Assembly: GCA_002269645.1 (NCBI GenBank)
Contig: NIVC01000609.1
Location: forward strand, 57,725 to 121,724
Reading direction: 5' to 3'
Source of the DNA: Macrostomum lignano
Taxonomy: Eukaryota
DNA: 64,000 nucleotides
The notes below the pieces were generated by a model. The model saw only the letters and a list, made by a program, of their open reading frames with translations. It had not been told where the DNA came from and made no database searches. Numbering within the stretch: the first letter of the stretch is position 1; every line of letters starts with the position of its first letter. Position numbers and translations under genes: made by a program. Below, in pieces: positions 19,510 to 63,362 of this stretch.

Positions 19510-22500
19510 TCACTGATAATCCGTAGTGAAAATATCCGAGTTCGACAGGCCGGAGTCCGAGGAGTTCACGCTGGTGCCGCCGTGCCGCAGGCGCTTCTTG
19601 GCCCGCTGCCGGCGCCGATTAGCGATGCCGGCGCCTCCGCTGCTGCCTCCAGCGCCGCTGCCACCGCCGCTGGCGGCTCCGTCGTCGTCGCTGCTGCTAC
19701 TAGACGACGTCGAGCTGTTGTCTCCACGGCCGCCGCCGGCGCCGCCGCTGCCAGAGGCGCCGCTGCCGGAGCTACCGCCGCCCGACGAACGGGTAGCTCC
19801 GCTGCTGCTCCGCTTCTGCGGTCCGCCGCCTCCGCTGCCGCCGCCGCTGGACGCTCCAGATGATGGATGGCCGCGAGCGGCTGCGGCCGCCTTCCGACTG
19901 GGAACGGCACGGAGGCTGCGGGTGCGACCGCCCGCCTGCTCATCGTCCAGATCGTCGGCAGCCAAAGCCAGCAGGTCGATGAAGGTGTACCTGGATCAGC
20001 CAAGAGACAGATGGTCTTTGTTCTGCTTTAAGTGGCAAAAAGCCAACATTAAATGCTAGCTTTTTTAAATTAAAATTAGCAAACTTTTAAGCTACACTCG
20101 TATATCCACAGTAATTTAAACACTTGATAAATTTTAGCTAGAAGCGATGCTATTTAGTTACAAGCCTCCTAAACTAGAAACTCCACAAGCTATAAGCCTC
20201 CTAAACTAGAAACTCCCCAAGCTATAAGCTTCATAAATAGAAACTCCACAAGCTATAAGCTTCATAAACTGGAAACTCCACAAGCTATAAGCCTCCTAAA
20301 GTGGAAACTCCCCAAGCTATAAGCTTCATAAACTAAAAACTCCACAAGCTATAGCTTCATAAATTAAAAACTCCCCAAGCTATAAGCCTCCTAAACTAGA
20401 AACTCCACAAGCTCTAAGCTTCATAAACTAGAAACTCCCCAAACTATAAGCCTCCTAAACTAGAAACTCCACAAGCTATAGTTTCATAAATTAGAAACTC
20501 CCCAAGCTATAAGCCTCCTAAACTGGAAACTCCCCAAGCTATAAGCTTCATAAATTAGAAACTCCACAAGCTATAAGCTTCATAAACTGGAAACTCCCCA
20601 AGCTATAAGCTTCATCAACTAGAAACTCCCCAAGCTATAAGCTTCATCAACTAGAAACTCCCCAAGCTATAAGCTTCATAAACTAGAAACTCCACAAGCT
20701 ATAAGCTTCATAAACTGCAAACTCTAAGCTAGAAGCTATAAGCTTCATCAACTAGAAACTCCACAAGCTACAAGCCTCCTAAACTAGAAACTCCCCAAGC
20801 TATTAGCTTCATCAACTAGAAACTCCCCAAGCTATAAGCTTCATCAACTAGAAACTTCACAAGCTATAGCTTCATAAACTAGAAACTCTACAAGCTATAG
20901 GCCTCCTAAATTAGAAACTCCACAAGCTATAAGCTTCATAAACTGGAAACGCCACAAGCTATAAGCTTCATCAACTAGGAAGCTGGCGGTAACCTCAGCT
21001 CCGCGGGCGCCGCCCGCACAACCTCGCGCAGAGCCTCCTGCATGAGCTCGTGCTGCAGCAGTGACAGATTGCGCAGCCGCTGCCGCATAATGTCCAGATG
21101 GCGGAGACTCTGCTCTAGGGGAGGCGGCGACTGACGAGAGCTTCCACCGCCGCGTCCACCATGGGCGGAGGCTGCAGTCCCGCCTCCAGGCGACATCAGA
21201 CAGTTGTTGAGTATCTCGGCCAGTCTGTCCAATTTCTGTTCGGACCAAAAGTGCAGAATGCTCGGACACAGCGGGTCTGTTAGCTGAGGCTCGCGCCATA
21301 GGACAGCACAGACTAGATCGAAACTTGGCTGCTCAAGTTTGAGCATTAGCAACAGATTAGTGGTAGCTTCCGCATGCCGGCCGCTGTCAAGGTGAGGCAG
21401 CAGTGGCAGGAATCGTTCTGTAGGCAAATCCTGAGCATTCAACAGCTGCCAAAGGAATAGTTGTTCAACACTCTCCCAGGAGAGACTGTCTCGTAGTAGA
21501 GTCACCTGGTAATAAAATAAAATAACTTAAAATAACTTTTGCTTTTGTCTATGGCTAAAAGTGACAAATTCAGCGAAGTCTCATAGCAAAAGTTGGCTGT
21601 TTTATTTTTAAGTCAGGGCCGCTGTACACTGCCAGGATTTTTCCTGGGGGGTCATCTGACCCCCTCCCTGACCCCCTTTCGGATCCGCCATTGAGTAAAT
21701 TTCTGCTCTCTCTCCAACTTTGGAGGAAGTATAGAACAGTTGAATTTCACTTTTTCTTAAATTTTAAGGGGGGAGGGGTCATGACCCCTAGATTTTCTCG
21801 CAAGGGAAGGGTCATGAACCCTAGATTTTCTCGCGGGGGAGGGGTCATGACCCCTAGATTTTCTCGCGGGGGAGGGGCATGCTTGGACGCAACATAGGGA
21901 TTCACCCGGCTGTTTCTATTGGCAACACACACATGTAAGTCGCTATTGGACAGAATAATAGTCACGTGACTGCTCTCAGCCAATAGCGACTTACATGTGT
22001 GTGTTGCCAATAGAAACGGCCGGGTGATTCCTAAGGTTGTGCATGTATGGGAAGGGGTCATGACGGCCTAGATTTTCTCGCGGGGGAGGGGTCATGACCC
22101 CTTGATTTTCTCGCGGGGGAGGGGTCAGCTGACCACTTTGACCTCCTGGATCCGCCATTGCACAGTATACTGTGTAATGCATAAGCCGAACCAAAACAAT
22201 TACCAGATTATCTTTGCGGAACAATTCCAAGTGTCCCTGCATAATATCGGCCACCATAGTCTGCAGCTGGGAGCAGTCAATGCTGGACACAATGATGCGC
22301 ATCAGATGCGGATTATTCTGGCACTGGCTGGCAAAGTTGCGGAACACATCGGGCAGCAGGTAGGCCAATAGGCGCGGATCGTCCTGGGCTAGCAGGTTCA
22401 AATCTTTGAACAGGCAGGTGCGCAGATCGGGATTCTCTTGGCTTTTGCAAAACTCTTTGTAGGCAACAAATTTATCGTCCTGGCTTTGGGCTCGGTCCAC

Positions 22501-25500
22501 TTTGAGAAAGTATAACAGGTAATAGCCAATGCGAGGGTGTCTGGCCGCCATCTCCGATAGCAGCAGGTACAGCGGCTGCCGCTTCGGGTCGTCCTCAGAG
22601 TACTGGCATAGCGTTCGGCAGATCACGAATATGGGAGTGCTCACGCTGTCCTCCAGGCTCCTGCGGCATGCAGTCAGGGATCGGCGGGATCGTTAGGGCT
22701 CTTTGCCGCGTTCTCCTCTGCTTTCATTGCCCATATTATTCTCTCTGTTCCTTCCCAGATTCTCCTGATCTGCCTTCCTCATCCCGACTCTCCCCGATCC
22801 CCCGACTCTCCCCGATCCCCTGACTCTCCTCCCGATCCCCTGACTCTCCTCCCGATCCCCTGACTCTCCTCCCGATCCCCTGACTCTCCTCCCGATCCCT
22901 GACTCTCCCCAATCCCCTGACTCTCCCCGATCCTCTGACTCTCCCCGATCCCATAACTCTCCCCGATCCCCTGACTCTCCCCGATCCCTGACTCTCCCCG
23001 ATCCCCTGATTCTCCCCGATCCCCTGATTCTCCTCCCGATCCCCTGACTCTCCTCCCGATCCCCTGACTCTCCCCGATCCCCTGACTCTCCTCCCGATCC
23101 CCTGACTCTCCTCCCGATCCCCTGACTCTCCTCCCGATCCCCTGACTCTCCCCGATCCCCTGACTCTCCCCGATCCCCTGACTCTCTCCGATCTCCTGAC
23201 TCTCCTCCCGATCCCCTGACTCTCCCCGATCCCCTGACTCTCCCCGATCCCCTGACTCTCCCCGATCCTCTGACTCTCCTCCCGATCCCCTGACTCTCCC
23301 CGATCCCCTGACTCTCCCCGATCCCTGACTCTCTCCGATCCTCTGACTCTCCCCGATCCCCTGACTCTCCCCCATCCAAAGACTCTCCCAATCCCTTGAC
23401 TCTCCCCCATCCGAAGACTCTCCCAATGCCTTGGCTCTTCCCCATCCAGACTCTCCTAATCGCTTGACTCTCCCAATCCCTTGACTCTCCCATACCCAAA
23501 AACTCTCCCAATCCCCTGACTCTCCGCCATTCAAAGACTCTCCCAATCCCCTACTTTTTCCCATCCCCTGATTAGCGTACTTCCGAAGAAAGTATCGTGC
23601 AAAAGCTCCGCAGGGAACTCACGAAGCATCGGCCGACTCCCCGGGAAAGATGGGGTCCTCCAACTGCGAGTGGCAGATTTCGCACAGGCAGGTGGCTATA
23701 CGACGCGAAAAGTCCAAATCGATGTCCTCCTCTTCTATGATGCCCTGCACCACCTGGTACATGATCTCGCACTGGGCCTCAGTATCGCTGCGAGAGTTTT
23801 AAAATAATAATTGTATTATATTAGGTTAGTAATTTCACATTGTCCTTAAGTCTTTAGCTTGATTGCACAATTCCTAGCAATAAGCTTCAATTCAGTGTAA
23901 AAAACTTTACCTTTCATCTCTAAGCTGCATAAGGCGATCCCGCATGACTGGGTCCAACTGCTGCAGGTAGGACTCAATATCCACCCTGTCTACCTGGTAA
24001 TGACAGCGCAGCTTCAGGCGTTGAAAGTCCCGACGAAGATCAAAAAACGCGCCGCTAGCGCCGCCGACAGTTCCACCGGCGCCGCCGCCAGCGCCGTTCT
24101 CTGCGTCCGACATTTCGGCGTCGCTGAACTCGGCAGATTCCGAACGGCGACGCCCTCTGCCACCGCCAGAGCCGACAAAAGTTGCCGCCGCAGCTGCAGC
24201 CGACGGTTCCATCGACACGTCCGGCTGGACGCTGGCTGGGGCGGCGGATGGCGCTGGCGGCGCCGGAGGCGTCGGCGGTTTCGGCGGCGGAGTGGCGGAG
24301 CGCGACAAGGACTCGTGGTGATGCCCGCCGCCTGAAGTCGAGGAGGCCGGCGGCGTCGACGTCTGCCGAGCGATGCCGCCGCTGCTGGAGACGCCGCTGC
24401 TGGAGACGCCGCTGCTGGCAGCCGATACGATGATTGCCGAATCATAGATTGGCGTCGGTTGAAGGCCGCCGACAACCGCTGAAGCGGGGTCTGGCAGCCT
24501 GGCGGACTGGCGTAATGGGGAACACGGAACTAATTCAGGTGCTTAGTCGCTGAGTGATTGTTTGAAATAAAAGGGAGATTGGCGACGGTGAATCGCCTAG
24601 CGATAAAAACAATTGTTCAGAATATCGCCCGTGTCCGACAGAAATATGTTCCTCTCCCCCTGAATCCACCCCGACAATCCCATCTCCCTAAATGTTTTCC
24701 CCCCGAAAATCCCAACCCCCTACCTGAATCTTTCTCACCGAAAATCCCATCCACCCGAATCTTTCCCACCGAAAATCCCATCCACCCTGAATCTTTCACC
24801 CCGAAAATCCCATCCCCCGGAATCTTTCAACCCAAGAATCCCATCTCCCTGAATCTTTCCCACCAAAATCCCATCCACCCTGAATCTTTCACCCCGAAAA
24901 TCCCATCCCCCGGAATCTTTCCCACCAAAATCCCATCTCCCTGAATCTTTCACTTCGAAAATTCCATCTCCCCTGAATCTTTCACTTCGAAAATTCCATC
25001 TCCCCTGAATCTTTCACCCCGAAAATCCCATCTCCCTTGAATCTTTCCCCCCGAAAATCCCATCTCCCTTGAATCTTTCCCCCCGAAAATCCCATCTCCC
25101 CTGAATCTTTCACCCCGAAAATTCCATCTCCCCTGAATCTTTCACCCCGAAAATTCCATTCCCCTGAATCTTTCACCCCGAAAATCCCATCTCCCCTGAA
25201 TCTTTCACCCCGAAAATCCCATCCACCCTGAATCTTTCACCCCGAAAATTCCATCTCCGAAAAACGTTCTTTCCGCTATCAAATTCTCCAGACTCACCGC
25301 AGCCGCAGCCGCCTGAGGCGCCTGTGCCGGCACCAGATCGGCAAACGTGTGCCTCAACAGGCCGTGCATCTGTTTGTCCATCTTAGCCAAATCGAATATA
25401 TGCGCCAGACTGTGCACAACTTTTCGTTCGACTGCGGACAGCAGACACAAGCGGAGCCTGCGCCGCAGGTCGCCAGCCAGAGCCGGATAATAATTATCGG

Positions 25501-28500
25501 CTAATCGGCATAGAAAATCCAGCATGCCAATAGCCAGGTGCTGCTGATGCGATCTGGCTAAATTGTTTTGAATAACCAGCACGCCGGGCTCAATGTTCAT
25601 GAGATTGTGCTGCGCCGGGTCGAACATCAGCCAATCGTAATAGAGCGCCAATTTCATATTGCAAACCACTGTTGGCGATGTACAGCTAAGTATTAGCCAG
25701 CTAATGAATGCCCAGCGCTGTACAACCTCGGAGGCGATTGTCTCATTAGACGGATGCACCTGGGTGACTACGAAACGAATCCAATCTACTCGGAGACTCT
25801 GCGACTCGGGCGTGTTCAGGTATTTGCGAGTTAACCAATCTAGATAGCGTTTGTGCGAGCCCATGTGTACGAACTTCAGGTACCTGGAGGGGCATTGGGA
25901 TGGTAGGATTTTATTAGTGACTAGAATTCCTCAGTGAATTGGATTTCCCAATGGGATTCCCACTTATTGGGATTCCTCGCTGACTGGAATTTTCCACTGG
26001 GATTTCCCACAGATCAATATTTCCCACTGATTGGGACTACCCACTGCTTAGAATTATCGATTGATTAGGATTCCCTAAGGATTCGGATTACCCACTGATT
26101 GGGATTTCCCGGCTATTGGGATTTCCCACTGAGATTCCCAACAGATTAGGACTTCCCACCGATTGGGATTACCCACTGATTAGGATTCCCTAAGGATTCG
26201 GATTACCCACTGATTGGGATTTTCCCCTGATTAAGATTTCCCACTGATTGGGATTTCCCGGCTATTGGGATTTCTCACTGGGATTCCTAACAGATTAGGA
26301 CTTCCCACCGATTGGGATTACCCACTGATTGGAATTATCGACTGATTAGGATTCCCTAAGGATTCGGATTACCCACTGATTGGGATTTTCCACTGATTAA
26401 GATTTCCCACTGATTGGGATTTCCCGGCTATTGGGATTTCTCACTGGGATTCCCAACAGATTAGGACTTCCCACCGATTGGGATTACCCACTGATTACAA
26501 TTATCGACTGATTCGGATTCCCTACGGATTCGGATTCCCACTGATTGGGATTTCGCAGCTATTGTGATTTCCCGCTGGGATTCCCACCTGATTTGGATTT
26601 CCCACTAAATAGGATTCTCTTGAATAGAATTTACTTGTGATATAGCAGTGATTTTTTCGAGCCTGGAACGATTTAATACATGGAATTCTCCACTGATTGG
26701 GAATCTCTATTGACTGTAATTCCCATAAAACAAAGCCACCAACTTACCACTTGATTCGCTGTTCCATATCGTGAGTCAGCCGGCTTGTAATGCACACGGG
26801 ACTGGGCGGTTGGGCCAACAGCTGGGAAACTCCGGTAAATTTCGGAGACAGGCTGGTCGGCGAGTGCAGAATCTCCGACCAGAGACGTTCGAACTCGGGA
26901 AGCTTGGCCAGGTCCTATGCGGGAAACCGGTGGGAGTGCACTAATGCATAAGTGACTCTCCCTTCTGATCTAACAGGTTGAATGCTTAGCTGTGACTCTC
27001 CCTTCTGATCTAACAGGTTGAATGCTTAGCTGTGACTCTCCCCTCTGATCTAACAGGTTGGATGCTTAGCTGTGACTCTCCCTTCTGATCTAACAGGTTG
27101 AATGCTTAGCTGTGACTCTCCCCTCTGATCTAACAGGTTGGATGCTTAGCTGTGACTCTCCCTTCTGATCTAACAGATTGAATGCTTAGCTGTGACTCTC
27201 CCCTCTGATCTAACAGGTTGGATGCTTAGCTGTGACTCTCCCCTCTGATCTAACAGATTGAATGCTTAGCTGTGACTCTCCCTCTGATCTAACAGGTTGG
27301 ATGCTTAGCTGTGACTCTCCCCTCTGATCTAACAGGTTGGATGCTTAGCTGTGACTCTCCCCTCTGATCTAACAGGTTGGATGCTTAGCTGTGACTCTCC
27401 CCTCTGATCTAACAGGTTGGATGCTTAGCTGTGACTCTCCCTCTGATCTAACAGGTTGGATGCTTAGCTGTGACTCTCCCTCTGATCTAACAGGTTGGAT
27501 GCTTAGCTGTGACTCTCCCCTCTGATCTAACAGGTTGGATGCTTAGCTGTGACTCTCCCCTCTGATCTAACAGGTTGGATGCTTAGCTGTGACTCTCCCC
27601 TCTGATCTAACAGGTTGAATGCTTAACTGTGACTCTCCCCTCTGATCTAACAGGTTGGATGCTTAGCTGTGACTCTCCCCTCTGATCTAACAGATTGAAT
27701 GCTTAGCTGTGACTCTCCCTCTGATCTAACAGGTTGGATGCTTAGCTGTGACTCTCCCCTCTGATCTAACAGGTTGGATGCTTAGCTGTGACTCTCCCCT
27801 CTGATCTAACAGGTTGGATGCTTAGCCGTGACTCTCCCCTCTGATCTAACAGGTTGGATGCTTAGCTGTGACTCTCCCTTCTGATCTAACAGGTTGAATG
27901 CTTAGCTGTGACTCGCCCCTCTAATATAACAGGTTGGATGCTTAGCTGTGACCATACATGCGCAACAGTCGGCCGAGTCGGCCGATCCGGCCGACCGATT
28001 TGGCGGCCAATCAAGGAAGTCGCAAAAATGCCCACCCAAAAAATAACCTGAAGAGTAGTACTAAGTAGCTGACGAGGCATTTTAGCTTAATAAAACAGTC
28101 ATAGTTACTCCTGCCGTTTACCCAAAGTTGCGTTAATTTTGCTTTCGGGTTTTTTTATATGTAAGTCGCATTTTTGGCCAAAAACTACGTCGCATTTTTG
28201 TTAAAACTAAGTCGCACGGCTGACCGAATTTTGGAGGTTGCACATGTATGGCTGTGACTCTCCCCTCTGATCTAACAGGTTGAATGATTAGCTGTGACTC
28301 TCCCCTCTGATCTAACAGGTTGGATGCTTAGCTGTGACTCTCCCCTCTGATCTAACAGGTTGAATGCTTAGCTGTGACTCTCCCCTTGGGTCCCGAGCAG
28401 CATGAGCTAAATTCACAGGTTAACTCACCTGCAACAGACGCAGCAGATCCCGCCCAATACTCAGACAGTCTGTAAAATTATCCCTCAGCAATGGCAATAC

Positions 28501-30916
28501 AAAATCAATTTCTCGTTTTCTTAAGCGCTCCAACGCGCCCTGTAAACCGTGGCTAACAGGCGCGGCGTGATCGGCAATGATTCTGAGATAAGAGTACACA
28601 ACCACTGGCACCACAGCCTTCTTATCTAGCCAATTGTGCCTGTGCTGGCTCAGTATGTCTAGCACAGTTTCAACCAGCCACAGATTCAATGGAGACAAAT
28701 CTCCGCCAGTCATCCTGCGCAGAAGATGATGCAACACGTGCTCGGCATTGATTGTATTGCTTTTGACCAGCTCGTGAAATAGCCATAGCAACTGGCGCCG
28801 AGGCGTATCCAATAATTTAGCCCAATATTCGCCTAGCAACCGGCTGATTTCTGTGACGGCCAAATTTAAATTGTCTTTAGTAGTTAGCAGCAAGAATTTG
28901 AATGCTTTGGCCGCAAATGCTGGCTCACATAGGGAGGAATAGAGGAGGCCCAGCTGTACCGCGTTGCATGCATTATGCGATGTGAGCGACTGCAGAAAAT
29001 GGTATGGCAAATTTGTCATTTTGAAATCAAATTTGACAGCAAAATGTTAATCTTACAAAATGCGTTCACTACTTACATGCTTTAGTAGTACATCATTCAT
29101 AGCTGATTCGGAATCTTCAATTGAGTTTAGCAGCTGTTTGACTTCATTGTAGGCAGATTGCAGCAACTACAAACACAAAATGGATTTCTCTACATGAACT
29201 CATTGGATAGGCAATGATGCTCTTAACAATACTGTCCTCATATTTGTTTTATATTTTATTTATATCATATGCCTTGAATTTTAAGCTTAGTAGAGAACCT
29301 AAATATATGGCCTCTGAGAAAATTTAAGTTATACAATGAGTCTATAACATGGCCTAATTTTTATTATCATACTGCACAATATAGGCTTATTAACATAATC
29401 TTTAAATAATACAAAGCAATCTATTAAGCAAGCTAGATAACAAAGATAAGATGAGCTAAATTAAATATCTCTCAAAGTCTAGTATATATATAGCATATCT
29501 AATATAGAATTAAATCTATATGCTAAAACTACTTCTACTAAAACTATAGATATGGCTATAAGAGTTATAGATACAAAAGGTTTTACATAGAAAAAAGTAA
29601 ATACAAATACAGAATAGTTTGGACCTTAGTTGGCTACAATAAGGTTAGCCCATGTTGTAGATCATATTTTTTGTATATGCTAAAAAACTTAGCTTGGTAG
29701 TGTTTACTAATAAAAATTGCATGATTAAAACAATTAGAAATAATATAACAATTCAAAGTATTATTTGATATAAAAACCTAATATAATTTTGTTGTCAAAA
29801 TTTTCAAATAAATACTAGTACTATTATTACAAAGTCATAGTTTCTTTGCTACTAAGTAGTGGTAATAGGCTTTAATTAGGCTTTAATAGGGAGAGTCACC
29901 CTTTTAGCATATTTTATGCAATGATCTGATACTTTTATATTTACTAGATATGCTTTTGGATTATAAAAGGGTGTTTATAAATAGTATTTATATGAAAATG
30001 ATAATGTCAAAAAATTGTTTTTCTTGTATATACATTAGATGTACATTAGCTAGAGGCTAGAGCTTTTAAATGCTAGAATTTTTTAGCATTTATTATACCT
30101 TACCTACAACATGGCCTTTACTAGACATTTGGCTATTATATCAATTAACAAATGAATTCTTATCTTTTTAACTTCATTGCTATAGCTACTCCATAGTCTA
30201 GATCATACTAGGTGCATGCTTAAAACAAAAATTTAATAGGCCTGATTACAAATGCACACCAAAAAATAGAGTGCATACCCATTCTTAAAACTATGCCAGT
30301 GTGTAACAATAAATGACTTTTTATGTTATAGGCTCCTAACAATAAATGACCTTTTTGAATTATGTAGACCCCCTAATGGACCCTTCTTGGCAAATAATTT
30401 GATAGATTTTTCTTTTTTTGGTGATACTATTTGTAATGAAAATTTGATACACACAAAAGTTAGTTTGAATGCTTTATTACAAGCTTAAAAACCTAGAAAG
30501 CTGGAAATTTACACTTTAAAATGAACTTTTTTCATTTTATTAATTCACAATAACTCTTCCGTGTGATTCTATAAAGTGCATGCCAGGTGTGCATGCCTAC
30601 TTTTGGCATGCAAAGCCAATGCATGCCTGAATTTTTGGGCATATACTACATGATCCAGTGTGGTAGCTACTATATTATTCCATTGTTAGGCCCTACTATA
30701 TTTAGAATTATTTTAGATTTCAAATGGTTCTATTTAAGGCCAAATCATTTAAAATAATTTAATACTTAGTTAGGCCATAATATTTAAAATTAATACTATT
30801 AGACAATGGCATGCTTCCTCAACTCATTAACAAACAATAATTAATAAACATACCTTGACTGCATCTGGTACAACTTCGATAGCATCCTGTTGGATTAGAC
30901 CTGGAATAGTAGTCAT
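19510..30916 (-). CDS. INTS3: Integrator complex subunit 3 (SOSS-A), 10 exons, ~1225 aa
   Basis: Exons 30854-30916, 29077-29166, 28429-28989, 26748-26914, 25298-25883, 23911-24506, 23623-23787, 22204-22660, 20994-21505, 19510-19990. All introns are GT-AG with matching phases (3678 nt). Motifs match INTS3: IGRDLLRLLQ, PEFERLW, VHPSNE, KLALYYDWL, MNIEPG, DTEAQCE, RIGYYLLY, WESVEQ. Confidence 0.95.
20165..20975. repeat. 32-bp minisatellite (aagctataagcttcataaactagaaactccac)n in INTS3 intron 9
   Basis: About 25 units running up to the exon 9 donor. Confidence 0.95.
21614..21693. mobile_element. Short MITE-like element (CAGGGCCG...GGATCCGCCATTG)
   Basis: The GGATCCGCCATTG end recurs at 22149-22161. 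The 5' motif tcagggccgctgtacac recurs on the minus strand near 13860-13876. Confidence 0.45.
21877..22050. mobile_element. 174-bp palindromic MITE inserted into a 33-bp repeat in INTS3 intron 8
   Basis: ~53-bp inverted arms (21897-21949 / 21980-22031) around a central AGTCACGTGACT. The end ggttgtgcatgtatgg resembles the TIR of the 27952-28251 element. Flanked by ggaggg/gaaggg (candidate 6-bp TSD, 1 mismatch). Confidence 0.7.
22785..23570. repeat. ~19-22-bp minisatellite (gactctccccgatcccct)n in INTS3 intron 7
   Basis: Tandem units; source of the GESGDR pseudo-ORFs. Confidence 0.95.
24650..25255. repeat. ~32-bp minisatellite (tgaatctttcaccccgaaaatcccatctcccc)n in INTS3 intron 5
   Basis: About 18 units. 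Confidence 0.9.
25930..26700. repeat. Degenerate composite repeat (gattgggatttcccact core) in INTS3 intron 4
   Basis: Recurring ~18-bp core with higher-order blocks (gattccctaaggattcggattaccc at ~26070, 26185, 26350). Confidence 0.85.
26950..28385. repeat. 40-bp minisatellite (gtgactctcccctctgatctaacaggttggatgcttagct)n in INTS3 intron 3, interrupted by a MITE
   Basis: About 25 units left of 27952 and 3 units right of 28251. Confidence 0.95.
27952..28251. mobile_element. 300-bp non-autonomous DNA transposon (MITE) with 15-bp TIRs and a 6-bp TSD
   Basis: Starts CCATACATGCGCAAC and ends GTTGCACATGTATGG (14/15 inverted match). CTGTGA is duplicated at 27946-27951 and 28252-28257, and the interrupted repeat unit is restored when the element is removed. 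Confidence 0.9.
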
Positions 30917-33036: not shown

Positions 33037-34323
33037 ATGGTATGAGACTATAGAACTAGGACCTGTATCCTATTTGTTTGCTAAAAAAGTTTTATATCAT
33101 ATTAAAATTTTAATGTTATTAGTACTTAACCATATATTCTGCATCCCTTTTGCAGGCTGTCATTGCTTCTATTGCTAAATCGGCACTCAGTGCCCACTGC
33201 CCACAGCCACACTATGTTCGCGAGTACACCTTGGTGTTGCTGCGCAGCCAGTGTGGCAGCCAGATACTGCTGGGCTATAAGAAGCGTGGATTTGGTCAAG
33301 GCAAATGGAATGGATTTGGCGGGAAGGTAGGGCTGGGAAACTGAAGACTGGGGAATTGCTTTGCTTTTGTAATCCTTGCTCATTGTTCTAGCTTACTGTT
33401 TACTGTATTTATAAATTGCTGATCTCATTCAACTGATTAATGATCACCTGTCTTAGACTGCTTATGATCCTATCTCTCTGATAATTGATTCCATCTGTTG
33501 GATATTTTTGATCCCATTTACCATGTTGCTGATCCCATCTCTCTGACCATTGATACTATCTCTCTGACCCCTGATCCCATCTTCGTGACCACTAATCGCA
33601 TCTCTCTGACCCCTGATATCATCTTATTGACGCCTGATCCCATCTCTCAGACCATTAGTTCGATCTCTCGGATATTGCTAATCCCATCTCTCGGATATTG
33701 CTGATCCCATCTCTCGGATATTGCTGATCCCATCTCTCAGATATTGCTGATCCCATCTCTCGGATATTGCTGATCCCATCTCTCAGATATCGCTGATCCC
33801 ATCTCTAACCGCCCCCACCCCCCGCCAGGTGGAAGTAGGTGAGACGCCTTTGGCCGCGGCAATCCGCGAGCTGCACGAAGAGTCCAGCCTTGAGGTGCGG
33901 CCGGCCGACATCCGCCTAGCCGGCCGCATGCTGTTCCAATTCGCCGACGAGACTCGCGTATTCCGAGTGCACATCTACACTGGCAGCCGCTGGACCGGCC
34001 AGCCAGTTGAATCGGACGAGATGCGGCCGCGCTGGTTTAATCTGGCCGACATACCGTTCGACAACATGTGGCCGGACGACGCCTATTGGCTGCCGAAGGT
34101 GCTGGCTGGCCAGTCTGTGATTGGCTACTTTCTGTACGCTGCCGACAAGGTCACGGTGCTGCATCACTGTCTGCGCGACCTGGTAGAGCCTTTGCGCGGC
34201 GATGAGGAATCCAACGAGGCGGCTGATGATGAAGACGAAATTGAAGCTGCCATAGTGAGCAATATTGGTCAGCCCGTCTGCGTCTGCGGTGCCAACCTGC
34301 CAACTCCGCTGCCTGTCAGCTAG
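33037..34323 (+). CDS. NUDT1: Oxidized purine nucleoside triphosphate hydrolase (MTH1-like Nudix hydrolase), ~222 aa
   Basis: Exons 33037-33039 (ATG only, donor GTATGA; inferred), 33156-33326 and 33829-34323. Contains the MTH1 signature [25 protein letters not shown], the Nudix box [33 protein letters not shown] and MWPDDAYW. Confidence 0.92.
33640..33810. repeat. 23-bp minisatellite (gctgatcccatctctcggatatt)n in NUDT1 intron 2
   Basis: About 6 clean units, preceded by degenerate copies from ~33470. Confidence 0.85.
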
Positions 34324-35037: not shown

Positions 35038-37167
35038 ATGGATTTATACGAGTCGCCGCTAGGCGAGCAGCGTCGGTCTCCATGGCAACAGTCGCATAGT
35101 CGCGATAGCGGCACGTCAGAACCGACACTCGATGCCGGCAGCACAGACAGCACTCTGTGGCTGGTCAGCCGCATCCTGTATCCACTGTTGGTGTGCCTGA
35201 TCAACTTCTCCCTAGCCATCGGTGCCTGGCTGTGCCTGCTGCACCCGCTGAGGCTCTACCGGCTTCTCCGCTGGCTGCGGGCCCGCCAAGCCGGCCTTCG
35301 ATTTCGCCTGGTGCCGCTGGACGGCGCGCACTACCGTCTGGCTGAGAAGGACCGACCGGACCGGCTGCGGCCGTCGCTGCTGCTGCTGCACAGCGTCGCC
35401 GATGACTGCACAGTGTGGACAGAGTTCGTGCGGCTGGCAGATTCCACTGTTAGTTGGTTAAAAAACTTCCTACCTTAATGTAGTAACCATAACCAAATTG
35501 CAACTGGGGTGAGGTAACGCTTTTATCACAAGCCCTAAATTTCATATATATAACGCCACATCACTAAGGGGGGCATGAGGAGGGAGGTACTCTGTAGCTG
35601 ACGCCCCCTCTGTACTTCTGGTGCCCCTCTGTATCTTGCGCTTCTATGTATCTGGCGTGCCCCTCTGTATCTGGCGTCTCTATCTGGCGTCCCTCTGTGT
35701 CTGGCGTCTATCTGGCGTCTCTATCTGGCGTCCCTCTGTGTCTGGCGTCTATCTGGCGTCTCTATCTGGCGTCCCTCTGTGTCTGGCGTCTATCTGGCGT
35801 CTCTATCTGGCGTCCCTCTATGTCTGGCGTCTCTATCTGGCGTCCCTCTATGTCTGGCGTCTCTATCTGGCGTCCCTCTGTGTCTGGCGTGCCCGTCTGT
35901 ATCTGGCGCCCCTCTGTGTCTGGCGTGCCCCTGTAGCTGACGCCCCTGCTTCAGGTGACACGACAATTTCCATTTCACTTCAGCACGAGCCGAGATTAAC
36001 TCGAATTTAATATTCGTATTCATCAATCATTTTAAACCACAAATTTATCAATACACTACATATAGCAGTAGACAGCTAGCCGGTTTCTTAATTAAAATAA
36101 ATATTTTGTTACTATTTTCCTGGCAGCTTGATCACGTGATCGCCGTCGATCTGCCGGGCCACGGCGGCAGCCTGGTTGGCTCGGAGGAAGACTTTGATTT
36201 CGGCCCGCTGGCTGACAGGATTCGCAAAGTTCTGTTGGCTGCCGGCCTGCCGCCCAACCAGCGATTGCACGCTGTCGGGTGCGGCGCGGGCGCCGGCGTG
36301 GCTTTGGCCTTGGCTGTTGGCTGGCCCAGCCAGGTTGAACTGCTCACCATGGTGTCTCCACTGCTGCCGCCGCTGACAACAGGGGATGACGGCACTGGTG
36401 TCAATAAAGACGGCAATGATAGAGCCGGTGACGGCAATGATAGAGCCAGTGACGGCAATGATAGAGCCAGAGACGGCAATGATAGAGCCAGAGATGGCAA
36501 TGATAGAGCCAGTGACGGCAATGATAGAGCCAGAGACGGCGATGATAGAGCCGGTGACGGCAATGATAGAGCCAGAGACGGCGATGATAGAGCCGGTGAC
36601 GGCAATGATAGAGCCAGAGACGGCAATGATAGAGCCGGTAACGGCAATGATAGAGCCGGTGATGGCAATGATAGAGCCAGTGACGGCAATGATAGAGCCG
36701 ACTGGCAAAGATACAACAGCGACCTGTACAACTGGCTGCTGCCCTACAATCAGGACCTGCTCACTGAGTCCATTCGGCGCCGTTTCTACCGACCAGCGGC
36801 CACTGGTGGACTGTCGATACTCTGGTGGCCGATGCGCTCAGTCTGGCTGTCGGACAGGCTGCCTAAGCTGAATTTTTATCGGGCTTTGCTGGCCAATCTG
36901 GCTGAAGAGCCTGGCCAGACCGATCTGCTGGCCTTGGCTGGCCGGGTTCGCGTGCCCGCTCACATTGTCTGGGGCGCGCAAGATGAGGCGAGTTTCAGCA
37001 TCTTGCATCTTGGGATGGCAGCCTCTGGGAGAGAAAAACTGTAGGGCCTGTATTGAGCCTGACGGATAAAAAGGCTAATTCGGGAGAAGAGCGGGGAGGG
37101 AGAAGAGAGGGGATGGGAGAAAAGAGGGGAGAGGAGAAGACAGGGGATGGGAAAAGAGAGGGGACGG

Positions 37168-41927: not shown

Positions 41928-52608
<10,681 letters not shown>

Positions 52609-56659: not shown

Positions 56660-58091
56660 CTAGCGTTTCGCGTTACCATAGGAACCGCGCGCGGGCGGCA
56701 CTTTAAAGCTGGCGGCGGCCTGGTACTGCAGCTGATAGGCCAGTGGGTGCACTTTGAAGCCGTACAGGCGCGGCACGAACTGATTGGCTGGCCGCTTGGG
56801 CCGGTATTCCGGGTGGACTAAAAATAGCATATGGGGAAACCCCGTGCCGAAATAGGCCCCGTCGGTGTGGTGGTGCCGCGAAGACTTCGGCGTGTAGACG
56901 TCCTGGCATTTGGGGCAGTACAGCTTCACCATGGCCTCGCCAGGCACGTCGGATAGGCCTGCAGGGTGAGGGCGATGGGGGAAGGAGTGTTGTGACCCAC
57001 CCCGTTCTTATCAAACCAGCGCCCACCCCCTTTCTTATAAAAAACGCACCCACCCCCATTCTTATCAAACCCGCACCCACTTCATTCTTATTAAACCCGC
57101 ACCCACCCCATTCTTATCAAACCCGCACCCACCCCATTCTTATCAAACCCGCACCCACTTCATTCTTATTAAACCCGCACCCACCCCATTCTTATCAAAC
57201 CCGCACCCACCCCATTCTTATCAAACCCGCACTCACCCCATTCTTATCAAACCCGCATACACCCCATTCTTATCAAACCCGCACCAACCCCATTCTTATC
57301 AAACCCGCACCCACTTCATTCTTATTAAACCCGCACCCACCCCATTCTTATCAAACCCGCACCCACCCCATTCTTATCAAACCCGCACCCACTTCATTCT
57401 TATTAAACCCGCACCCACCCCATTCTTATCAAACCCGCACCCACCCCATTCTTATCAAACCCGCACTCACCCCATTCTTATCAAACCCGCATACACCCCA
57501 TTCTTATCAAACCCGCACCAACCCCATTCTTATCAAACCCGCACTCACCCTATTCTTATCAAATCCGCACCCACCCATTCTTATCAAACCCGCACCCACC
57601 CCATTCTTATCAAACCCGCATCCACTTCATTCTTATCAAACCCGCACCCACCCATTCTTATCAAACCCGCACCCACCCCAACCTCCTCAACACACGCGGC
57701 AGAACACACAAGAGTCCAATCGCTCACCAATGGGCATCACTGGCTGATTCTCGCAATAGACCCGAGGACAGTAGCTGAACTCGCCATTCTGCCATTTCTC
57801 AATCATCTGGGCGATGCCGCGGTTAGTCATGATGTAGCGAGCGTGGATGAGGCCGTACAGCATCTCGGCGGCCTGCTCAATGATGTCGGATTGGTTGGCA
57901 TCGGACAGGTTGTCATCGGCTTCAAGATCGAGAATCATGTCCAGCGCCTGGTGATAGTGGGGCACCTGTTCGTTCAGGCCGGTCAAGTTGAACTTGTCCT
58001 GAATGTAGTCTTCATCGACTTCGCAGAAGAATTCGTTGCCGCGAAGGCCGCAGAACCAGGAGATCCAAGACACTTCTTCACTGGAGCTCAT
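56660..58091 (-). CDS. CSNK2B: Casein kinase II regulatory subunit beta, 2 exons, 220 aa
   Basis: Exons 57728-58091 and 56660-56958 (phase 1, PIG|LSD). [39 protein letters not shown], the zinc ligands CPRVYC and CPKC, and [14 protein letters not shown] are near-invariant CK2-beta sequence. Confidence 0.98.
56995..57680. repeat. ~25-bp minisatellite (ccccattcttatcaaacccgcaccca)n filling the CSNK2B intron
   Basis: About 27 units; G-rich on the sense strand. Confidence 0.95.
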
Positions 58092-58989: not shown

Positions 58990-59270
58990 ACTCTATAATA
59001 ATAATAATAATATAGATACGATAGACAGATGCTGCTTAGATATCATATAGATACAATAGATAGGTGCTGTCTAGATATCATATAGGATACAGTAGGTAGA
59101 TGCTGTCTAGATATCATATAGATACGGTAGGTAGATACTGTCTAGATATCATATAGATAAGGTAGATAGATACTGTCAAAATATCATATAGAAACGATAG
59201 CTAGATACTGTCTAGATACGGTAGATAGATGCTGGGTGGGTAGTGTGCAGTTGCCATCTATATCTAGACG
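58990..59270. repeat. Degenerate ~35-bp repeat (gtagatagatgctgtctagatatcatatagatac)
   Basis: About 6-7 units. Confidence 0.75.
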
Positions 59271-59318: not shown

Positions 59319-62300
59319 CTAACTAGTGCGGCAGCTTCGTATCAGACCGGCTGCACCGTCGCAAGAGATGAAGGACGAGGCTGGGCCGATGGCAACAGTC
59401 GATGGCGGGACGCCAGCAGCCGGACCAGCCGAGGCTGAAGCGGCGGCAACTGATGATGCGGTGGGCCCCAGCTTAGCCAAAGCAGACCGCCGTCTAGCCA
59501 TGACAGCTAGCAACAGGCAGAGCGGTAAAGCCGCTGCAGCCAGAAGCAGAAAACGGTCTTTGTTGGGTGACGCTGCTCGAGATGATGTTGACACAGAAGA
59601 TCGGATGCTGCTAGGAATAAAACGAAACCAACGAAGCAGCAAAGAGCCTGCAAATGCAATTAAGTTAAACAAATAATTGGTAGAAATTGATTGCTATCAT
59701 ATACATAGAACTATAAAATAAAATTGAGTTTGCAATCAGCTTCCATACAGCATCATGCCTTAGTATTTTCTTGATTTCAAATTCATTTGGTCTGCGAATG
59801 CTTGATTAGGATAAAAAGCTCCGCATATGTATACATGTATGTATTAATGTTGTGTACTTTCTCAATCTCATTAATTAATCCGCTTTCCCTTTGCCTTTCT
59901 TGGCAACTCTTATCTAGTCCCTGACAGTCTTATATTCTCCCTGACAGGTCTCATCATATCGCTGACAGGTCTTATCTTGTCCCTGAAAGGTCTTATCTTG
60001 TCCCTGACAGGTCTAATCTTATTCCTGACAGATCTTATCTTGTCCCTGACAGGTTTAATCTTATTCCTGACAGATCATATCTTATCCCTGTCAGGTCTAA
60101 TCTTATTCCTGACAGAACGTATCTAATCTCGGACAGATATTATCTTGTCCCTGAAAGATCTTATCTTGTCCCTGAAAGATCTTGTCTTATCTCTGACAGA
60201 TCTTATCTGGTCCCTGACGGATCTTATCTTGTCTTTAACAAATCCATCTTGTCCCTGACAGGTTGTATCCGTCTCGTCTCTTGTCTAGACACACCTAGCT
60301 TTCCGCCTACACGCTTAACATTGTCCTAACACACCAATATTGTCCCAACACACTAACTCCTGCCCATACACCCCACAACCACATCAGCGCAACTCACTCC
60401 GCAGTTTAGACAGCCAGCTCGCAGACTCGCTCCCGGAGTTGCCGGGACAAGGCCGGTCATCTGACGAGCCAACAGTGGGCGCAGCGGCGGCAGCCAGAGG
60501 ACTGGACTGAGCGGCAACATCCTCATCATCAGCAGCAGCATCGGCCATATGCTCAATAGTAGAGAATGCTGTAGAATCCGATGCAGTCAGATTCAATAGC
60601 AAATCGTTGCCCAGACTAGTTTCATACTGTTCAGCGTATCGCAAATCTAATCGAGCTGTCAATCTATCAGAGTCTGTCAGATCCGAGCCGCGATGTAAAA
60701 CAGGATTATCCATCTGGCCAGATGCCTCCTCCAGCACAGCGGCCACTCGGCGAGTCTCGGCCGGGCCAACTGGGCCGCTAAAGCTGTTATTATTGGAATT
60801 GCGACCCGTAGGCAGCAGAGCGGCAAACTGTTGCATTGGCAGGCGTTGCCAGGCAACCCGATCAACAGCATTAGTCGGTAGGCGGATTACGCTAGCCGAA
60901 ACTGCGGCTGCTGCGTCGCCGAGGTCAACCTCGTCCGGGCCGAGGCACAGCACCACTAGCGACGGACTGCCCGACGCGGCAGCTCGAAGAACGCGCCGAC
61001 ATTCGGCGGCCGATTCGCGGGTAGCAACCAACGCCAGGCAACGGCAATTCCCTGGGAGCAGCTCGCCGCCGCTGCCACTCTGACTATCAATCGAGTCCCA
61101 AGCGGTGAGCGAGTAGCAACAGAGTCCGAGCTGCATTCGCAGTCGCCTACTAAAGTAAGCGGCAAACTGAACAGCCAGCCAGTCGTCAGTGTCGCCAGAA
61201 TAGTACAGCGAACTGGCCAATATAATATCGTAGCAAGCGGCCGGATCATAGGCCGACCTCGCTAACGGTCGATAGTCATCAATTGGAGTCCAAGTGACGC
61301 GCAGAATACGCGCCAGGGCGCGCCAACCGGCGCTATCAGTATCTAGAATAGTTGAGCCGGCGCCAAACTGTAACAACGGATAGGCCAGAAAGTCAACCTC
61401 CGCCGGGCTCAACAATCCGGCATCGGTGTCGCCGTCGGCAACGTCCAGATTGGCCACCAGATAGCGGCCGCTCCAGGCGGGCCGGCGGCTGACCAGGTGT
61501 ACAAATAGGCGAGGTAAGAAAGCGCGGAACAATCTGACAGTGCTAGGAGTGACCAGGAACATGCAGTACTCAGCATCGGCTAGCGGGTCATCGGAGTCTT
61601 CATCGTCGCCATCTAGCCGACTGAGAAGCTGCTCAGCTGGCAGGCTCAGACAGCGGCAGGAGCGACGCTCGGCCTCCAACGCTAAACTGAGCCGTTGAAC
61701 GAAGTCTTTCACCGAGCCAGCGGCCGCATCGCCCTCACTGAATAAGAGCCCGTCGGCGCTAACCAATGCCAGTTTGAAATCGCGCCGGCGGCCGTAACAG
61801 CTGCCGGATTCGAACTCGCTGGCCAGCTGGCCGACGTTAACGCCGGCCAGGCTGTCGTCTGAGAAGGCGCCGCCTGACTGCGGGGAGTTTCGGCATGGCG
61901 GGGAGTTGGGGTGATTTTTAATAATCCCAAAAGCGTTGCCCTGACGGAACTAAGAGCCTGTATAGGAGAATATTCCATAGGGGATAGGGACATGATACCC
62001 CTCATGGGATCTTTTGGGCGATTTGCTACTCTATACTCGTACTCTAAATAATCTTTGGGCGTATCTCCCACTCCCTACAGATTCCTACGGTACAATCTGC
62101 CACTCCCTACAGGTTCCTACGGTACAATCTGCCACTCCCTACAGGTTCCTACGGTACAATCTGCCGCTCCCTACAGAATCCTACGGTACAATCTGCCGCT
62201 CCCTACAGAATCCTACGGCACAATCTCCCACTCCCTACAGAATCCTACGGTACAATCCCCCACTCCCTACAGAATCCTACGGCACAATCCTCCACTCCCT

Positions 62301-63362
62301 ACAGATTCCTACGGCACAATCTGCCACTCCCTACAGAATCCTACGGTACGAGCTACAATCTACCACTCCCTACAGAATCCTACGGCACAATCTGCCACTC
62401 CTACAGAATCCTACGGCACAATCTGCCACTCCCTACAGAATCCTACGGCACAATCTGCCACTCCCTACAGAATCCTACGGTACGAGCTACAATCTACCAC
62501 TCCCTACAGAATCCTACGGTACAATCTCCCACTCCTTACAGAATCCTACGGCACAATCTGCCACTCCCTACAGAATCCTACGGCACAATCTGCCACTCCC
62601 TACAGAATCCTACGGCACAATCTGCCCCAATCGAGCAGGTCTGCCACTCCTTAATTCCAGCAGAAAATAACATTTACCCCGGACACATCGGGTGAGACGC
62701 TGCGCGTCTCAAATTCGTCTACAACCCGTCGGACGCGCCCGGATGCCGCCGAGTCGAACTCGTCGCCGGCGGCACCCAAGTCTTCAGGCGACTCGTTCAA
62801 CATTAGGAAGATCGCCTTCCAGCACTCGGACTCCGCTAGCCAGATGGACTCAGCCTCGGACTCATCGAAGGTGTCGCCAGTCAAAGCTCGGAAAACAATC
62901 GGCTCTTGAGCCGAGGCCGCCTCGAAATCTAAGCCGTTAGTTAGGCCTTCAAATTCTTCCATAGCAACAAAGATTAAACGCCGTCGGCAGCGTTGGCGAC
63001 ACCTGGCCCCACCGAGACCGGCCAGAAACTTTTTCAATGGTACTAGAGAGCGCGGACTGACTACTAACAGGCAGTAGTCAGATAGGGACAGCAAATTAGA
63101 TAGATAATTTCCAACTTCGTTTTCATTCTCAGCTACTGAGGCGGAGGACACGGCTGCGGCAGCGACATCGAAGCCGAACAGCTGGCAGGCAGCGGACTGG
63201 CGCAGCCCAATAATTCATCGATTCGCCGTTTCAACAGGGCAGCGAATCGTTCAGCCAGACGGTCGGGCCTGGCCGGCACCACAGATTTCAAGGCGCGGCC
63301 ATAGTCCGAGGCGAGACCACGGTGAACCGGTGAGGCCTGGCCTGGCCGCTGTCCGCTGCCAT
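59319..63362 (-). CDS. Three-exon gene for a ~830-aa protein with three TIR/SEFIR-like domains and a C-proximal TM helix; two 1-nt frameshifts in exon 1
   Basis: Exon 1 62678-63362 (donor GTAAAT), exon 2 60398-61877 (alternative in-frame acceptor at 61940; donor GTGAGT, phase 1), exon 3 59319-59647 (acceptor tttgcag, phase 1). Exon 1 needs one extra C at 63315 and one extra G at 63206-63208 to read through. Three internal repeats show a beta/alpha pattern like TIR. Confidence 0.7.
59930..60270. repeat. ~21-bp minisatellite (cctgacaggtcttatcttgtc)n in intron 2 of the TIR-like gene
   Basis: About 15 degenerate units. Confidence 0.9.
62070..62630. repeat. ~32-bp minisatellite (ctgccactccctacagaatcctacggcacaat)n in intron 1 of the TIR-like gene
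   Basis: About 17 units. Confidence 0.95.

What the first reader, a model, noticed from the sequence alone, without database searches (positions are those of the whole stretch)
59319..63362. Membrane-anchored protein with three tandem TIR-like domains and no receptor ectodomain
Joining the three exons, which match in phase, gives ~830 aa with three similar alpha/beta units. Unit 1: RFTVVLASDYG..FAALLKRRIDELLGL..DYCLLVVSP..WKAIFLML. Unit 2: FKLALVSADG..FVQRLSLALE..EYCMFLVTP..WRALARIL. Unit 3: YDIILASSLY..FAAYFSRRLRMQLGL..CRCLALVAT..WQRL. This follows the TIR pattern: beta-A YDVFIS, helix-A FVxxLxxxL, beta-C xCIVVLSP and a terminal W helix. Exon 3 adds FLLLAAAALPLCLLLAVMA followed by RRR (59496-59552), a single TM with a basic flank. 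I see no catalytic Glu at the WCxxE position in any unit, so a scaffold role is more likely than NADase activity. Known TIR proteins are TLR/IL-1R receptors, soluble adaptors or SARM. A cytosolic triple-TIR protein with a C-proximal anchor is not an architecture I can name and could be an undescribed organelle-anchored innate immune adaptor.
Basis: partly seen in the sequence, partly recalled or inferred. Interest (0 to 1): 0.8.

Follow-up and report, generated by a model that had tools for sequence, protein, structure and literature searches.

The report
Flatworm-only triple-repeat membrane protein gene
This is a real three-exon gene of the flatworm Macrostomum lignano, already deposited as a "hypothetical protein", that encodes three copies of a lineage-specific alpha/beta domain plus one membrane helix; the proposed TIR (innate-immunity) identity has only a weak structural hint and no sequence support.

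Summary
The gene model is right. The three exons, both GT-AG junctions and the stop match GenBank proteins of Macrostomum lignano. The window is the last 64 kb of contig NIVC01000609.1.

Exon 1 in this window is not one open frame. Two 1-nt C-run contractions split it into three frames, so the deposited product here (PAA79909.1) has 697 aa and starts at Met135. A 98%-identical copy elsewhere encodes the intact 831-aa protein.

The three units are truly homologous. Within this protein that is not significant, but it is strong through the only relative found, a 30%-identical paralogue in the same species (E 1e-40 to 6e-13 between its units).

One strong hydrophobic segment is present. It is not clearly conserved in the paralogue.

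TIR identity is not established:
- Pfam, PADLOC, NCBIfam, PDB sequence and profile searches, and hhalign against a validated TIR profile all gave nothing.
- A TIR HMM scored no better than decoys.
- An AlphaFold model of unit 1 (pLDDT 78) has TLR10 TIR as its best PDB match, at only E=0.034 and TM 0.35/0.45.

Verdict: an uncharacterised, lineage-restricted protein that may be remotely TIR-like.

The parts
62678..63362 (-). Exon 1 (ATG at 63362). In this window it is broken into three reading frames. It encodes unit 1 plus a linker.
   Evidence: Three-frame translation. tblastn of P0004 splits into three frames. The DNA alignment with the intact copy L001 differs only by two 1-nt gaps.
63310..63311 (-). 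Frameshift site 1. The C-run is CC here and CCC in the intact copy (TCGCC^TCGG).
63172..63174 (-). Frameshift site 2. The C-run is C here and CC in the intact copy (TCGGC^TTCG).
62960..62962 (-). Internal ATG (Met135 of the full protein, MEEFEG…). It is used as the start of the deposited 697-aa product of this locus (PAA79909.1).
   Evidence: P0003 is 100% identical to the window from 62962.
62774..63332 (-). Unit 1 of the repeated alpha/beta domain (interrupted by the two frameshifts).
   Evidence: Alignment A2. P4_U1 vs P7_U1 gives E=3e-31. AlphaFold model has pLDDT 78 and pTM 0.81.
61878..62677 (-). Intron 1 (GT…AG), mostly a 32-bp minisatellite of 17 copies at 62063-62626.
60398..61877 (-). 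Exon 2. It holds units 2 and 3 and about 190 aa of low-complexity linker.
   Evidence: Open frame. 99.8-100% identical to P0003.
61269..61787 (-). Unit 2
   Evidence: P4_U2 vs P7_U2 gives E=1e-24. hhalign U1-U2 gives 98%.
60798..61241 (-). Unit 3 (the most degenerate unit).
   Evidence: P4_U3 vs P7_U3 gives E=8e-10. hhalign U2-U3 gives 90%.
59648..60397 (-). Intron 2 (A|GTGAGT … TTGCAG|), containing a 21-bp minisatellite of 17 copies at 59908-60263.
59319..59647 (-). Exon 3, including the stop codon TAG at 59321-59319.
   Evidence: 100% identical to the C-termini of P0003 and P0004.
59496..59552 (-). Predicted transmembrane helix FLLLAAAALPLCLLLAVMA, followed by RRR.
   Evidence: Kyte-Doolittle 19-residue mean of 2.68. 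It is the only peak >=1.6 in the protein.

Best explanation
Shown:
- This is a genuine gene known so far only from the free-living flatworm Macrostomum lignano. This locus is BOX15_Mlig033572g3; the intact copy is BOX15_Mlig023861g1.
- The full product has 831 aa. It consists of three tandem, homologous copies of a 150-185-aa alpha/beta domain with no detectable sequence relatives outside this species, then about 190 aa of low-complexity linker, one hydrophobic transmembrane helix, and a 58-aa Ala/Ser/Pro-rich tail.

Inferred, assembly:
- The two frameshifts in exon 1 of this window are most likely homopolymer-length errors of the PacBio-based Mlig_3_7 assembly, not biology.

Inferred, mechanism:
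- The repeated domain is a doubly wound alpha/beta module, possibly a very divergent TIR-like (flavodoxin-like) fold.
- Three such modules held on a membrane would most plausibly act as a non-enzymatic homotypic or heterotypic assembly platform, not as an NAD+ hydrolase.
For: Gene and product:
- Identity with deposited proteins, same junctions and same stop.
- The Mlig_3_7 paper describes a genome-guided, RNA-seq-based transcriptome assembly (PMC5730564). That the deposited gene models come from it is inferred.

Triple repeat:
- Paralogue units match each other at E=1e-40, 2e-22 and 6e-13.
- Unit-for-unit matches to this protein give E=3e-31, 1e-24 and 8e-10.
- Profile comparison gives 98%, 90% and 21%. 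The 30% identity retained between paralogues argues for constraint.

Restricted distribution:
- An exhaustive phmmer search of 1.84 billion representative proteins found only two clusters, both from M. lignano.

Transmembrane helix:
-.

Assembly error:
- The window differs from copy L001 in exon 1 only by CCC>CC and CC>C.
- A third copy, L002, has an intact exon 1 but two other 1-nt homopolymer deletions in exon 2, TT>T and CCC>CC.
- The assembly is Canu on PacBio reads.

Fold:
- The AlphaFold model of unit 1 has pLDDT 78 and pTM 0.81, with beta-alpha alternation.
- Among the top 36 PDB hits, 9 are TIR domains, including rank 1 (TLR10, E 0.034, prob 0.87).
Against: - No sequence or profile method links the units to TIR or to any other family.
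- TIR-HMM scores are matched by reversed and shuffled decoys.
- Foldseek TM-scores are below 0.5, and no hit reaches E<=1e-3.
- TIR hits are interleaved with Tm-1, DHODH, O-GlcNAcase and TIM-barrel hits.
- The BFVD library gives nothing.
- Only unit 1 could be modelled, with a six-sequence alignment. The model lacks a beta-B strand.
- The transmembrane helix is not clearly conserved in the paralogue, whose maximum hydropathy is 1.65. The tails are not significantly similar.
- Substitutions between copies (4 synonymous, 7 non-synonymous) are too few to show constraint.
- No expression, localisation or functional data were found.
Confidence: 0.4

Rival explanations
1. The repeated unit is a lineage-specific alpha/beta domain with no evolutionary relation to TIR. 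The Foldseek resemblance is the generic similarity of small three-layer alpha/beta sandwiches. The protein's role (structural, secretory-pathway, reproductive or other) has nothing to do with TIR-type signalling.
For: - All sequence and profile tests are negative, with decoy-level scores.
- TM-scores are 0.26-0.45, and non-TIR alpha/beta proteins are interleaved at the same E-values.
- Bona fide flatworm TIR proteins are detectable by standard domain searches; 20 are reported in S. mediterranea (PMC7958881). This one is not.
- The neighbouring genes are housekeeping genes: INTS3, NUDIX, T-box, CK2 beta.
Against: - The top PDB hit is a TIR with Foldseek probability 0.87.
- TIRs, not the far more numerous CheY or flavodoxin folds, dominate the small-domain hits.
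- By eye, the conserved pattern (aromatic-x-hydrophobic beta-A; 'SEYC-hhhh-S' beta-C followed by a helix; Trp in the last helix) is collinear with TIR boxes 1-3.
Confidence: 0.4
2. The copy in this window is a truly decaying duplicate. The two exon-1 frameshifts are real, so this locus yields either nothing or an N-terminally truncated 697-aa protein with only two and a third units. The intact function rests on the other copy or copies.
For: - The frameshifts are in the deposited sequence.
- The DV1 line carries extra chromosomes and 180 Mb of >=95%-identical duplicated blocks, so redundant copies can decay (PMC5730564).
- Non-synonymous changes outnumber synonymous ones between copies, 7 to 4.
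Against: - All four indels seen in three copies are 1-nt contractions of homopolymer runs. This is typical of PacBio consensus error.
- They sit at different places in different copies, while exon 1 is otherwise base-for-base identical between copies.
Confidence: 0.2
3. The units are catalytically active TIR NADases of the SARM1, plant TIR or Thoeris type.
For: Only the weak Foldseek similarity to TIR domains.
Against: - No TIR profile match of any kind.
- In the only plausible register, the position after beta-C that holds the catalytic Glu is Arg or Gly in the conserved 'FLxRL' motif of the units (alignment A2; this register is an inference).
Confidence: 0.03
4. There is no gene here: chance ORFs in GC-rich DNA between minisatellites, or an annotation artefact.
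For: - There are no homologues outside the species.
- The composition is low-complexity and Ala-rich.
- ORFs are open on both strands.
Against: - A 30%-identical paralogue keeps the same three-unit order, with E-values down to 1e-31.
- The splice sites are canonical and phase-matched.
- Exon 1, 496 codons of exon 2 and exon 3 are all open in the L001 copy.
- The AlphaFold model is confident.
Confidence: 0.02

Closest known systems
M. lignano paralogue PAA77530.1 / PAA64332.1 (BOX15_Mlig030938g1 / Mlig018063g1), hypothetical protein
   Same: It has the same three tandem units in the same order, at 30% identity over about 320 aa. Unit-for-unit E-values run from 3e-31 to 8e-10.
   Different: - A long QERQ-type coiled-coil or low-complexity region replaces the Ala/Asp-rich linker.
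- It has no clear transmembrane helix (maximum hydropathy 1.65).
- Its three units are much better conserved among themselves.
TIR domains (Pfam PF01582/PF13676; e.g. TLR10 TIR 2J67, PdTIR 3H16, TcpB 4LQC, oyster TIR-STING 6WT7)
   Same: - They are the best, though weak, structural matches of the unit-1 model.
- The beta-alpha order is the same, the size is similar, and a Trp-containing last helix is shared.
   Different: - No sequence or profile similarity.
- TM is 0.26-0.45.
- A large insertion sits where the BB-loop and alpha-B region would be, and the beta-B strand is not modelled.
- There is no Glu at the presumed catalytic position.
Ectodomain-less transmembrane TIR proteins of cnidarians (Hydra TRR-1/2, PDB 4W8G; Nematostella TIR-only receptor)
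   Same: A membrane-bound protein with putative TIR-type modules and no LRR or Ig ectodomain. Such architectures are already described (PMC7958881; 4W8G was hit by the TIR profile).
   Different: - Those have an N-terminal transmembrane helix followed by a single, canonical, Pfam-detectable TIR.
- Here there are three non-canonical units before a C-proximal helix.
Multi-TIR 'ecTIR-DC' proteins of bivalves and other invertebrates (Gerdol et al. 2017; recalled from memory, paper not read here)
   Same: Tandem TIR domains without receptor ectodomains occur in invertebrates.
   Different: Those TIRs are recognised by standard profiles, and they are not reported from Macrostomum.

Membership tests
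TIR / STIR superfamily | Significant match to a TIR-clan profile (TIR, TIR_2, SEFIR, TIR-like) | tested here: not met
   - Pfam at E<=10 for whole proteins and all six units: none.
- PADLOC and NCBIfam: none.
- Own 9-member TIR HMM with filters off: best 3.7 bits, equal to reversed and shuffled decoys.
TIR / STIR superfamily | Profile-profile similarity (HHpred-type) to TIR | tested here: not met
   - hhalign of the six-unit family profile against MyD88 and against a diverse TIR alignment gave probability 0.3-1.1%, with 14-20 columns aligned out of register.
- That TIR alignment retrieves 88 PDB TIR chains.
- Sensitivity was limited: Neff 3.0 and no secondary-structure scoring.
TIR / STIR superfamily | TIR fold: five-stranded parallel sheet (order 2-1-3-4-5) with five helices | tested here: inconclusive
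   - AlphaFold unit 1: pLDDT 78, pTM 0.81, four strands alternating with helices.
- Foldseek PDB top hit is TLR10 TIR at E 0.034, prob 0.87, TM 0.35/0.45. Other TIRs score E 0.16-0.5. No hit reaches E<=1e-3.
TIR / STIR superfamily | Box 1, box 2 (BB-loop) and box 3 (FW) motifs | tested here: inconclusive
   - Collinear look-alikes are visible in alignment A2: Y/F-x-h-h-h beta-A; 'PSSSG' in the paralogue; W in the last helix.
- No statistical support.
Enzymatic TIR NADases | Catalytic Glu in the helix after beta-C | tested here: inconclusive
   - No reliable alignment to TIR exists.
- In the hypothetical register the position is Arg or Gly of 'FLxRL'.
Single-pass / tail-anchored membrane proteins | One hydrophobic helix of about 19-21 residues and no signal peptide | tested here: met
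   - Kyte-Doolittle 2.68 at residues 755-773 of the 831-aa protein, the only peak.
- The N-terminus MAADSGQARPHRF has no hydrophobic core, read directly from the sequence.
Single-pass / tail-anchored membrane proteins | Classical tail anchor: helix within about 30-40 residues of the C-terminus | tested here: not met
   58 residues follow the helix.
Macrostomum triple-unit family (this gene and its paralogue) | Three collinear homologous units | tested here: met
   (BLASTP and hhalign); alignment A2.

The most novel reading that the evidence does not exclude
The units are a cryptic, extremely divergent branch of the TIR superfamily, invisible to all current profiles. In a phylum that has lost Toll-like receptors, the flatworm then carries membrane-tethered triple-TIR assembly platforms that could nucleate TIR-TIR signalling without a receptor ectodomain.
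Probability: 0.25. Interest if true: 0.6.

Novelty: new variant of a known kind. Interest (0 to 1): 0.35.

Why it matters
Platyhelminthes, M. lignano included, lack Toll-like receptors (PMC8609888) but keep some TIR adaptors (PMC7958881).

- If the TIR-like reading holds, a membrane-anchored triple-TIR protein that escapes all profile searches would add an unexpected component to flatworm innate signalling. It would also show that TIR censuses based on Pfam undercount.
- If it fails, this is one more species-restricted gene family of unknown function. It still has some use as an example of an internally triplicated orphan domain.

It is also a warning about this assembly: homopolymer indels in Mlig_3_7 truncate deposited proteins (697 and 545 aa instead of 831 aa).

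M. lignano has working transgenesis and RNAi, so the question is experimentally tractable.

Tried and rejected
Searches that found nothing:
- The word-indexed protein search with exon 2 and with the paralogue N-terminus did not even recover the query proteins themselves. That index is not informative for this family.
- The third search, with MyD88 TIR as bait, returned only vertebrate MyD88. This was too narrow for a good TIR profile.
- I therefore built a diverse TIR alignment from nine sequences written from memory. I validated it as a TIR profile against PDB, where it hit 88 TIR chains.
- Pfam, PADLOC and NCBIfam gave nothing. The only marginal Pfam hits (CH_2, LytTR, SRTM1 at E 0.07-0.26) were dismissed as noise.
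- A literature search for the gene identifiers found nothing.

Structure attempts:
- Single-sequence AlphaFold of units 2+3 gave pLDDT 37 and is unusable.
- The Foldseek BFVD search was uninformative.

Apparent signals that did not hold up:
- Nominal P-values of about 0.003 for the TIR HMM against the paralogue units looked promising. They collapsed against shuffled, reversed and reversed-HMM controls.

Readings rejected:
- The UniProt models P0001 and P0006, which fuse this gene to casein kinase II beta. GenBank calls CK2 beta as a separate gene 1.2 kb downstream at all three loci, and the stop codon at 59319 is conserved.
- Small introns as an explanation of the exon-1 frame changes. The intact copy simply has one more C at each site.
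- Tail similarity between the paralogues is not significant.
Full report
**Where the window comes from**

The window is eukaryotic. It has GC-rich exons, introns packed with minisatellites, and conserved metazoan genes. Cluster look-ups name the organism as Macrostomum lignano. The last 7,682 bases of the window are identical to the end of contig NIVC01000609.1 of assembly GCA_002269645.1, known as Mlig_3_7. According to its paper, that assembly was built with Canu from PacBio reads plus Illumina and 454 data. The same paper describes a genome-guided RNA-seq transcriptome assembly (PMC5730564).

**Checking the observation**

The gene lies on the minus strand.
- ATG at 63362.
- Donor GGG|GTAAAT after 62678.
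- Acceptor …CCGCAG| before 61877.
- Donor CGGA|GTGAGT after 60398.
- Acceptor …TTGCAG| before 59647.
- TAG ending at 59319.

The same junctions and the same C-terminus are found in deposited proteins. P0003 (PAA79909.1, 697 aa) is 100% identical to this window. P0004 (PAA63119.1, 831 aa) comes from a 98%-identical copy on NIVC01001871.1.

All quoted peptide strings of units 2 and 3 are present. So is the hydrophobic stretch at 59552..59496.

Exon 1 is different: in this window it is not one ORF. The ATG frame ends after 24 codons, and the sense continues first in one and then in the other frame. The intact copy reads RFTVVSPSDYG and ELLGCASPLPASCSAFDV.

At DNA level, exon 1 of the window and of the intact copy differ only by two single-base contractions of C-runs: CCC>CC near 63311 and CC>C near 63173. 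This is why the deposited product of this locus starts at Met135 (62962).

A third copy (NIVC01000350.1, P0005, 545 aa) has an intact exon 1. It has two other single-base homopolymer deletions in exon 2. So there are four indels, all 1-nt homopolymer contractions, at different sites in otherwise near-identical copies of a PacBio assembly. I judge assembly error more likely than real decay, roughly 4:1. Only read pile-ups can settle this.

**Are there three homologous units?**

Within this protein alone the similarity is not significant. BLASTP gives E 0.005-0.1 over 11-26 residues, and shuffle z-scores are 2.1, 2.4 and 0.7.

An exhaustive phmmer search of 1.84 billion representative proteins found only two clusters. 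One is the gene's own copies. The other is a 30%-identical protein of the same species (PAA64332.1 and PAA77530.1).

In that paralogue the three units are plainly related to each other, with E=1e-40, 2e-22 and 6e-13. Each matches the corresponding unit here, with E=3e-31, 1e-24 and 8e-10. Profile-profile comparison of unit pairs gives 98%, 90% and 21% probability. The triplication is therefore real and predates the paralogue split.

**Is it TIR?**

Sequence evidence is uniformly negative.
- Pfam at E<=10 on the whole proteins and on all six units returned no TIR-clan family.
- PADLOC and NCBIfam returned nothing.
- PDB sequence searches with the protein, with a three-unit profile and with a six-unit profile returned nothing relevant.
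- hhalign of the six-unit profile gave probabilities of 0.3-1.1%, with short out-of-register matches. The targets were MyD88, a MyD88 alignment, and a diverse nine-member TIR alignment. That last alignment was written from memory and then shown to recover 88 PDB TIR chains.
- With HMMER filters off, the TIR HMM scored at most 3.7 bits on the units. Shuffled sequences, reversed sequences and a reversed HMM scored nearly the same.

Structure gives the only positive hint.
- Single-sequence AlphaFold of units 2+3 failed, with pLDDT 37.
- Unit 1 with the six-unit alignment gave a confident model, pLDDT 78 and pTM 0.81. Strands at residues 3-6, 87-92, 120-124 and about 146 alternate with helices.
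- Against PDB, the best Foldseek hit is the TLR10 TIR domain (E 0.034, probability 0.87, TM 0.35 by query and 0.45 by target).
- PdTIR, TcpB/BtpA and the oyster TIR-STING follow at E 0.16-0.5.
- These TIR hits are interleaved with Tm-1, DHODH, O-GlcNAcase and triosephosphate isomerase, and nothing reaches E<=1e-3.
- BFVD gave nothing.

I read this as 'TIR-like is the leading but unproven candidate fold', at about 45%. The alternative is a lineage-specific doubly wound alpha/beta domain with only generic resemblance.

By eye, the family consensus (beta-A 'Y-K-h-h-h', 'SEYC-hhhh-S' followed by 'F-x-x-F-L-x-R-L', and Trp in the last helix) is collinear with TIR boxes. In that register the catalytic Glu position holds Arg or Gly. 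This is a lead, not a test.

**Membrane anchor and topology**

The 831-aa protein has exactly one strong hydrophobic segment, at residues 755-773 with a Kyte-Doolittle mean of 2.68. There is no N-terminal signal sequence.
- 58 residues follow the helix, so it is not a classical tail anchor.
- The RRR cluster is on the C-terminal side.
- The paralogue has no comparable peak (1.65). The tails are not significantly similar.
- The paralogue model is marked partial, and its C-terminus looks unreliable.

**Context**

The neighbours are ordinary.
- Casein kinase II beta lies 1.2 kb downstream on the same strand. It has two intact exons and is 87-89% identical to human.
- Integrator subunit 3, a NUDIX protein, an alpha/beta hydrolase and a T-box gene are also present.
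- There is no immune gene cluster.
- Two UniProt models fuse this gene to CK2 beta (P0001, P0006). GenBank keeps them separate at all three loci.

**Mechanism**

Shown: a spliced gene model whose junctions match the deposited models, a triplicated alpha/beta domain conserved between paralogues, and one hydrophobic helix.

Inferred: three tandem protein-interaction-type modules tethered to a membrane would act as a multivalent assembly platform. If they are TIR-like, they are non-catalytic. I put about 0.4 on this overall reading. I put about 0.4 on 'novel domain unrelated to TIR, function open'. NADase activity and a non-gene are each very unlikely.

**Comparison and novelty**

- The closest true relative is the same-species paralogue.
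- The closest known kind is the TIR domain. Two membership criteria (profile match and profile-profile match) were tested and not met, and the fold criterion is inconclusive. I therefore do not file it as a TIR protein.
- Ectodomain-less transmembrane TIR proteins are already known in cnidarians (PMC7958881). That part of the architecture would not be unprecedented.
- Flatworms lack TLRs (PMC8609888) but have Pfam-detectable TIR proteins (PMC7958881).
- The protein is deposited only as 'hypothetical'. No paper mentions its identifiers.

**Verdict**

The anatomy is largely confirmed, with an important correction to exon 1. The TIR and immune interpretation is unproven. Interest is moderate to low (0.35). 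It would rise to about 0.6 if a deep-alignment HHpred run or a structure showed a cryptic TIR.

Noticed in passing
window 63311, 63173; L002 exon 2 (about 8115 and 8344 in locus coordinates): Single-base homopolymer contractions truncate the deposited proteins of two of three near-identical copies, giving 697 and 545 aa instead of 831. This suggests that systematic indel errors in Mlig_3_7 propagate into GenBank and UniProt protein sets.
   Followed up: partly
window 56696-58091 (-): Casein kinase II beta has only two coding exons, and the intron is filled by a repeat array. UniProt models A0A1I8HRW8 and A0A1I8HX14 wrongly fuse it to the upstream triple-unit gene. Whether the two genes share a trans-spliced polycistronic precursor, which is common in M. 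lignano, is open.
   Followed up: partly
window 62063-62626, 59908-60263, 59010-59218: Both introns and the 3' flank of the gene are dominated by minisatellites: 32 bp x17, 21 bp x17 and 35 bp x6. Array lengths differ between the gene copies.
   Followed up: no
window 43800-45800: About 2 kb of extreme strand-asymmetric purine-rich repeat (GC skew -0.95, AT skew -0.88). It reads as (ERRGE)n in ORF lists and is almost certainly non-coding satellite.
   Followed up: no
window 36106-37044 (+): An alpha/beta-hydrolase ORF runs in frame through a (DGNDRA)n minisatellite. It could be a coding repeat expansion or an intron read through by the ORF finder.
   Followed up: no
window 20975-29019 (-); 49681-50100 (+); 33829-34323 (+): Integrator complex subunit 3 (several exons), a T-box gene exon and a NUDIX exon are all ordinary conserved genes. 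Many other tandem arrays (e.g. 600-1300, 3800-4750, 7400-9150, 47500-48650, 50100-51100) produce long spurious ORFs on both strands.
   Followed up: partly
window 15560-16954 (-): A 464-aa Ser/Gly/Ala-rich ORF with no Pfam match. It gave a weak tblastn match (27% over about 90 aa, E 2e-4) to the Ala/Ser-rich tail of the triple-unit protein. This is probably compositional.
   Followed up: no
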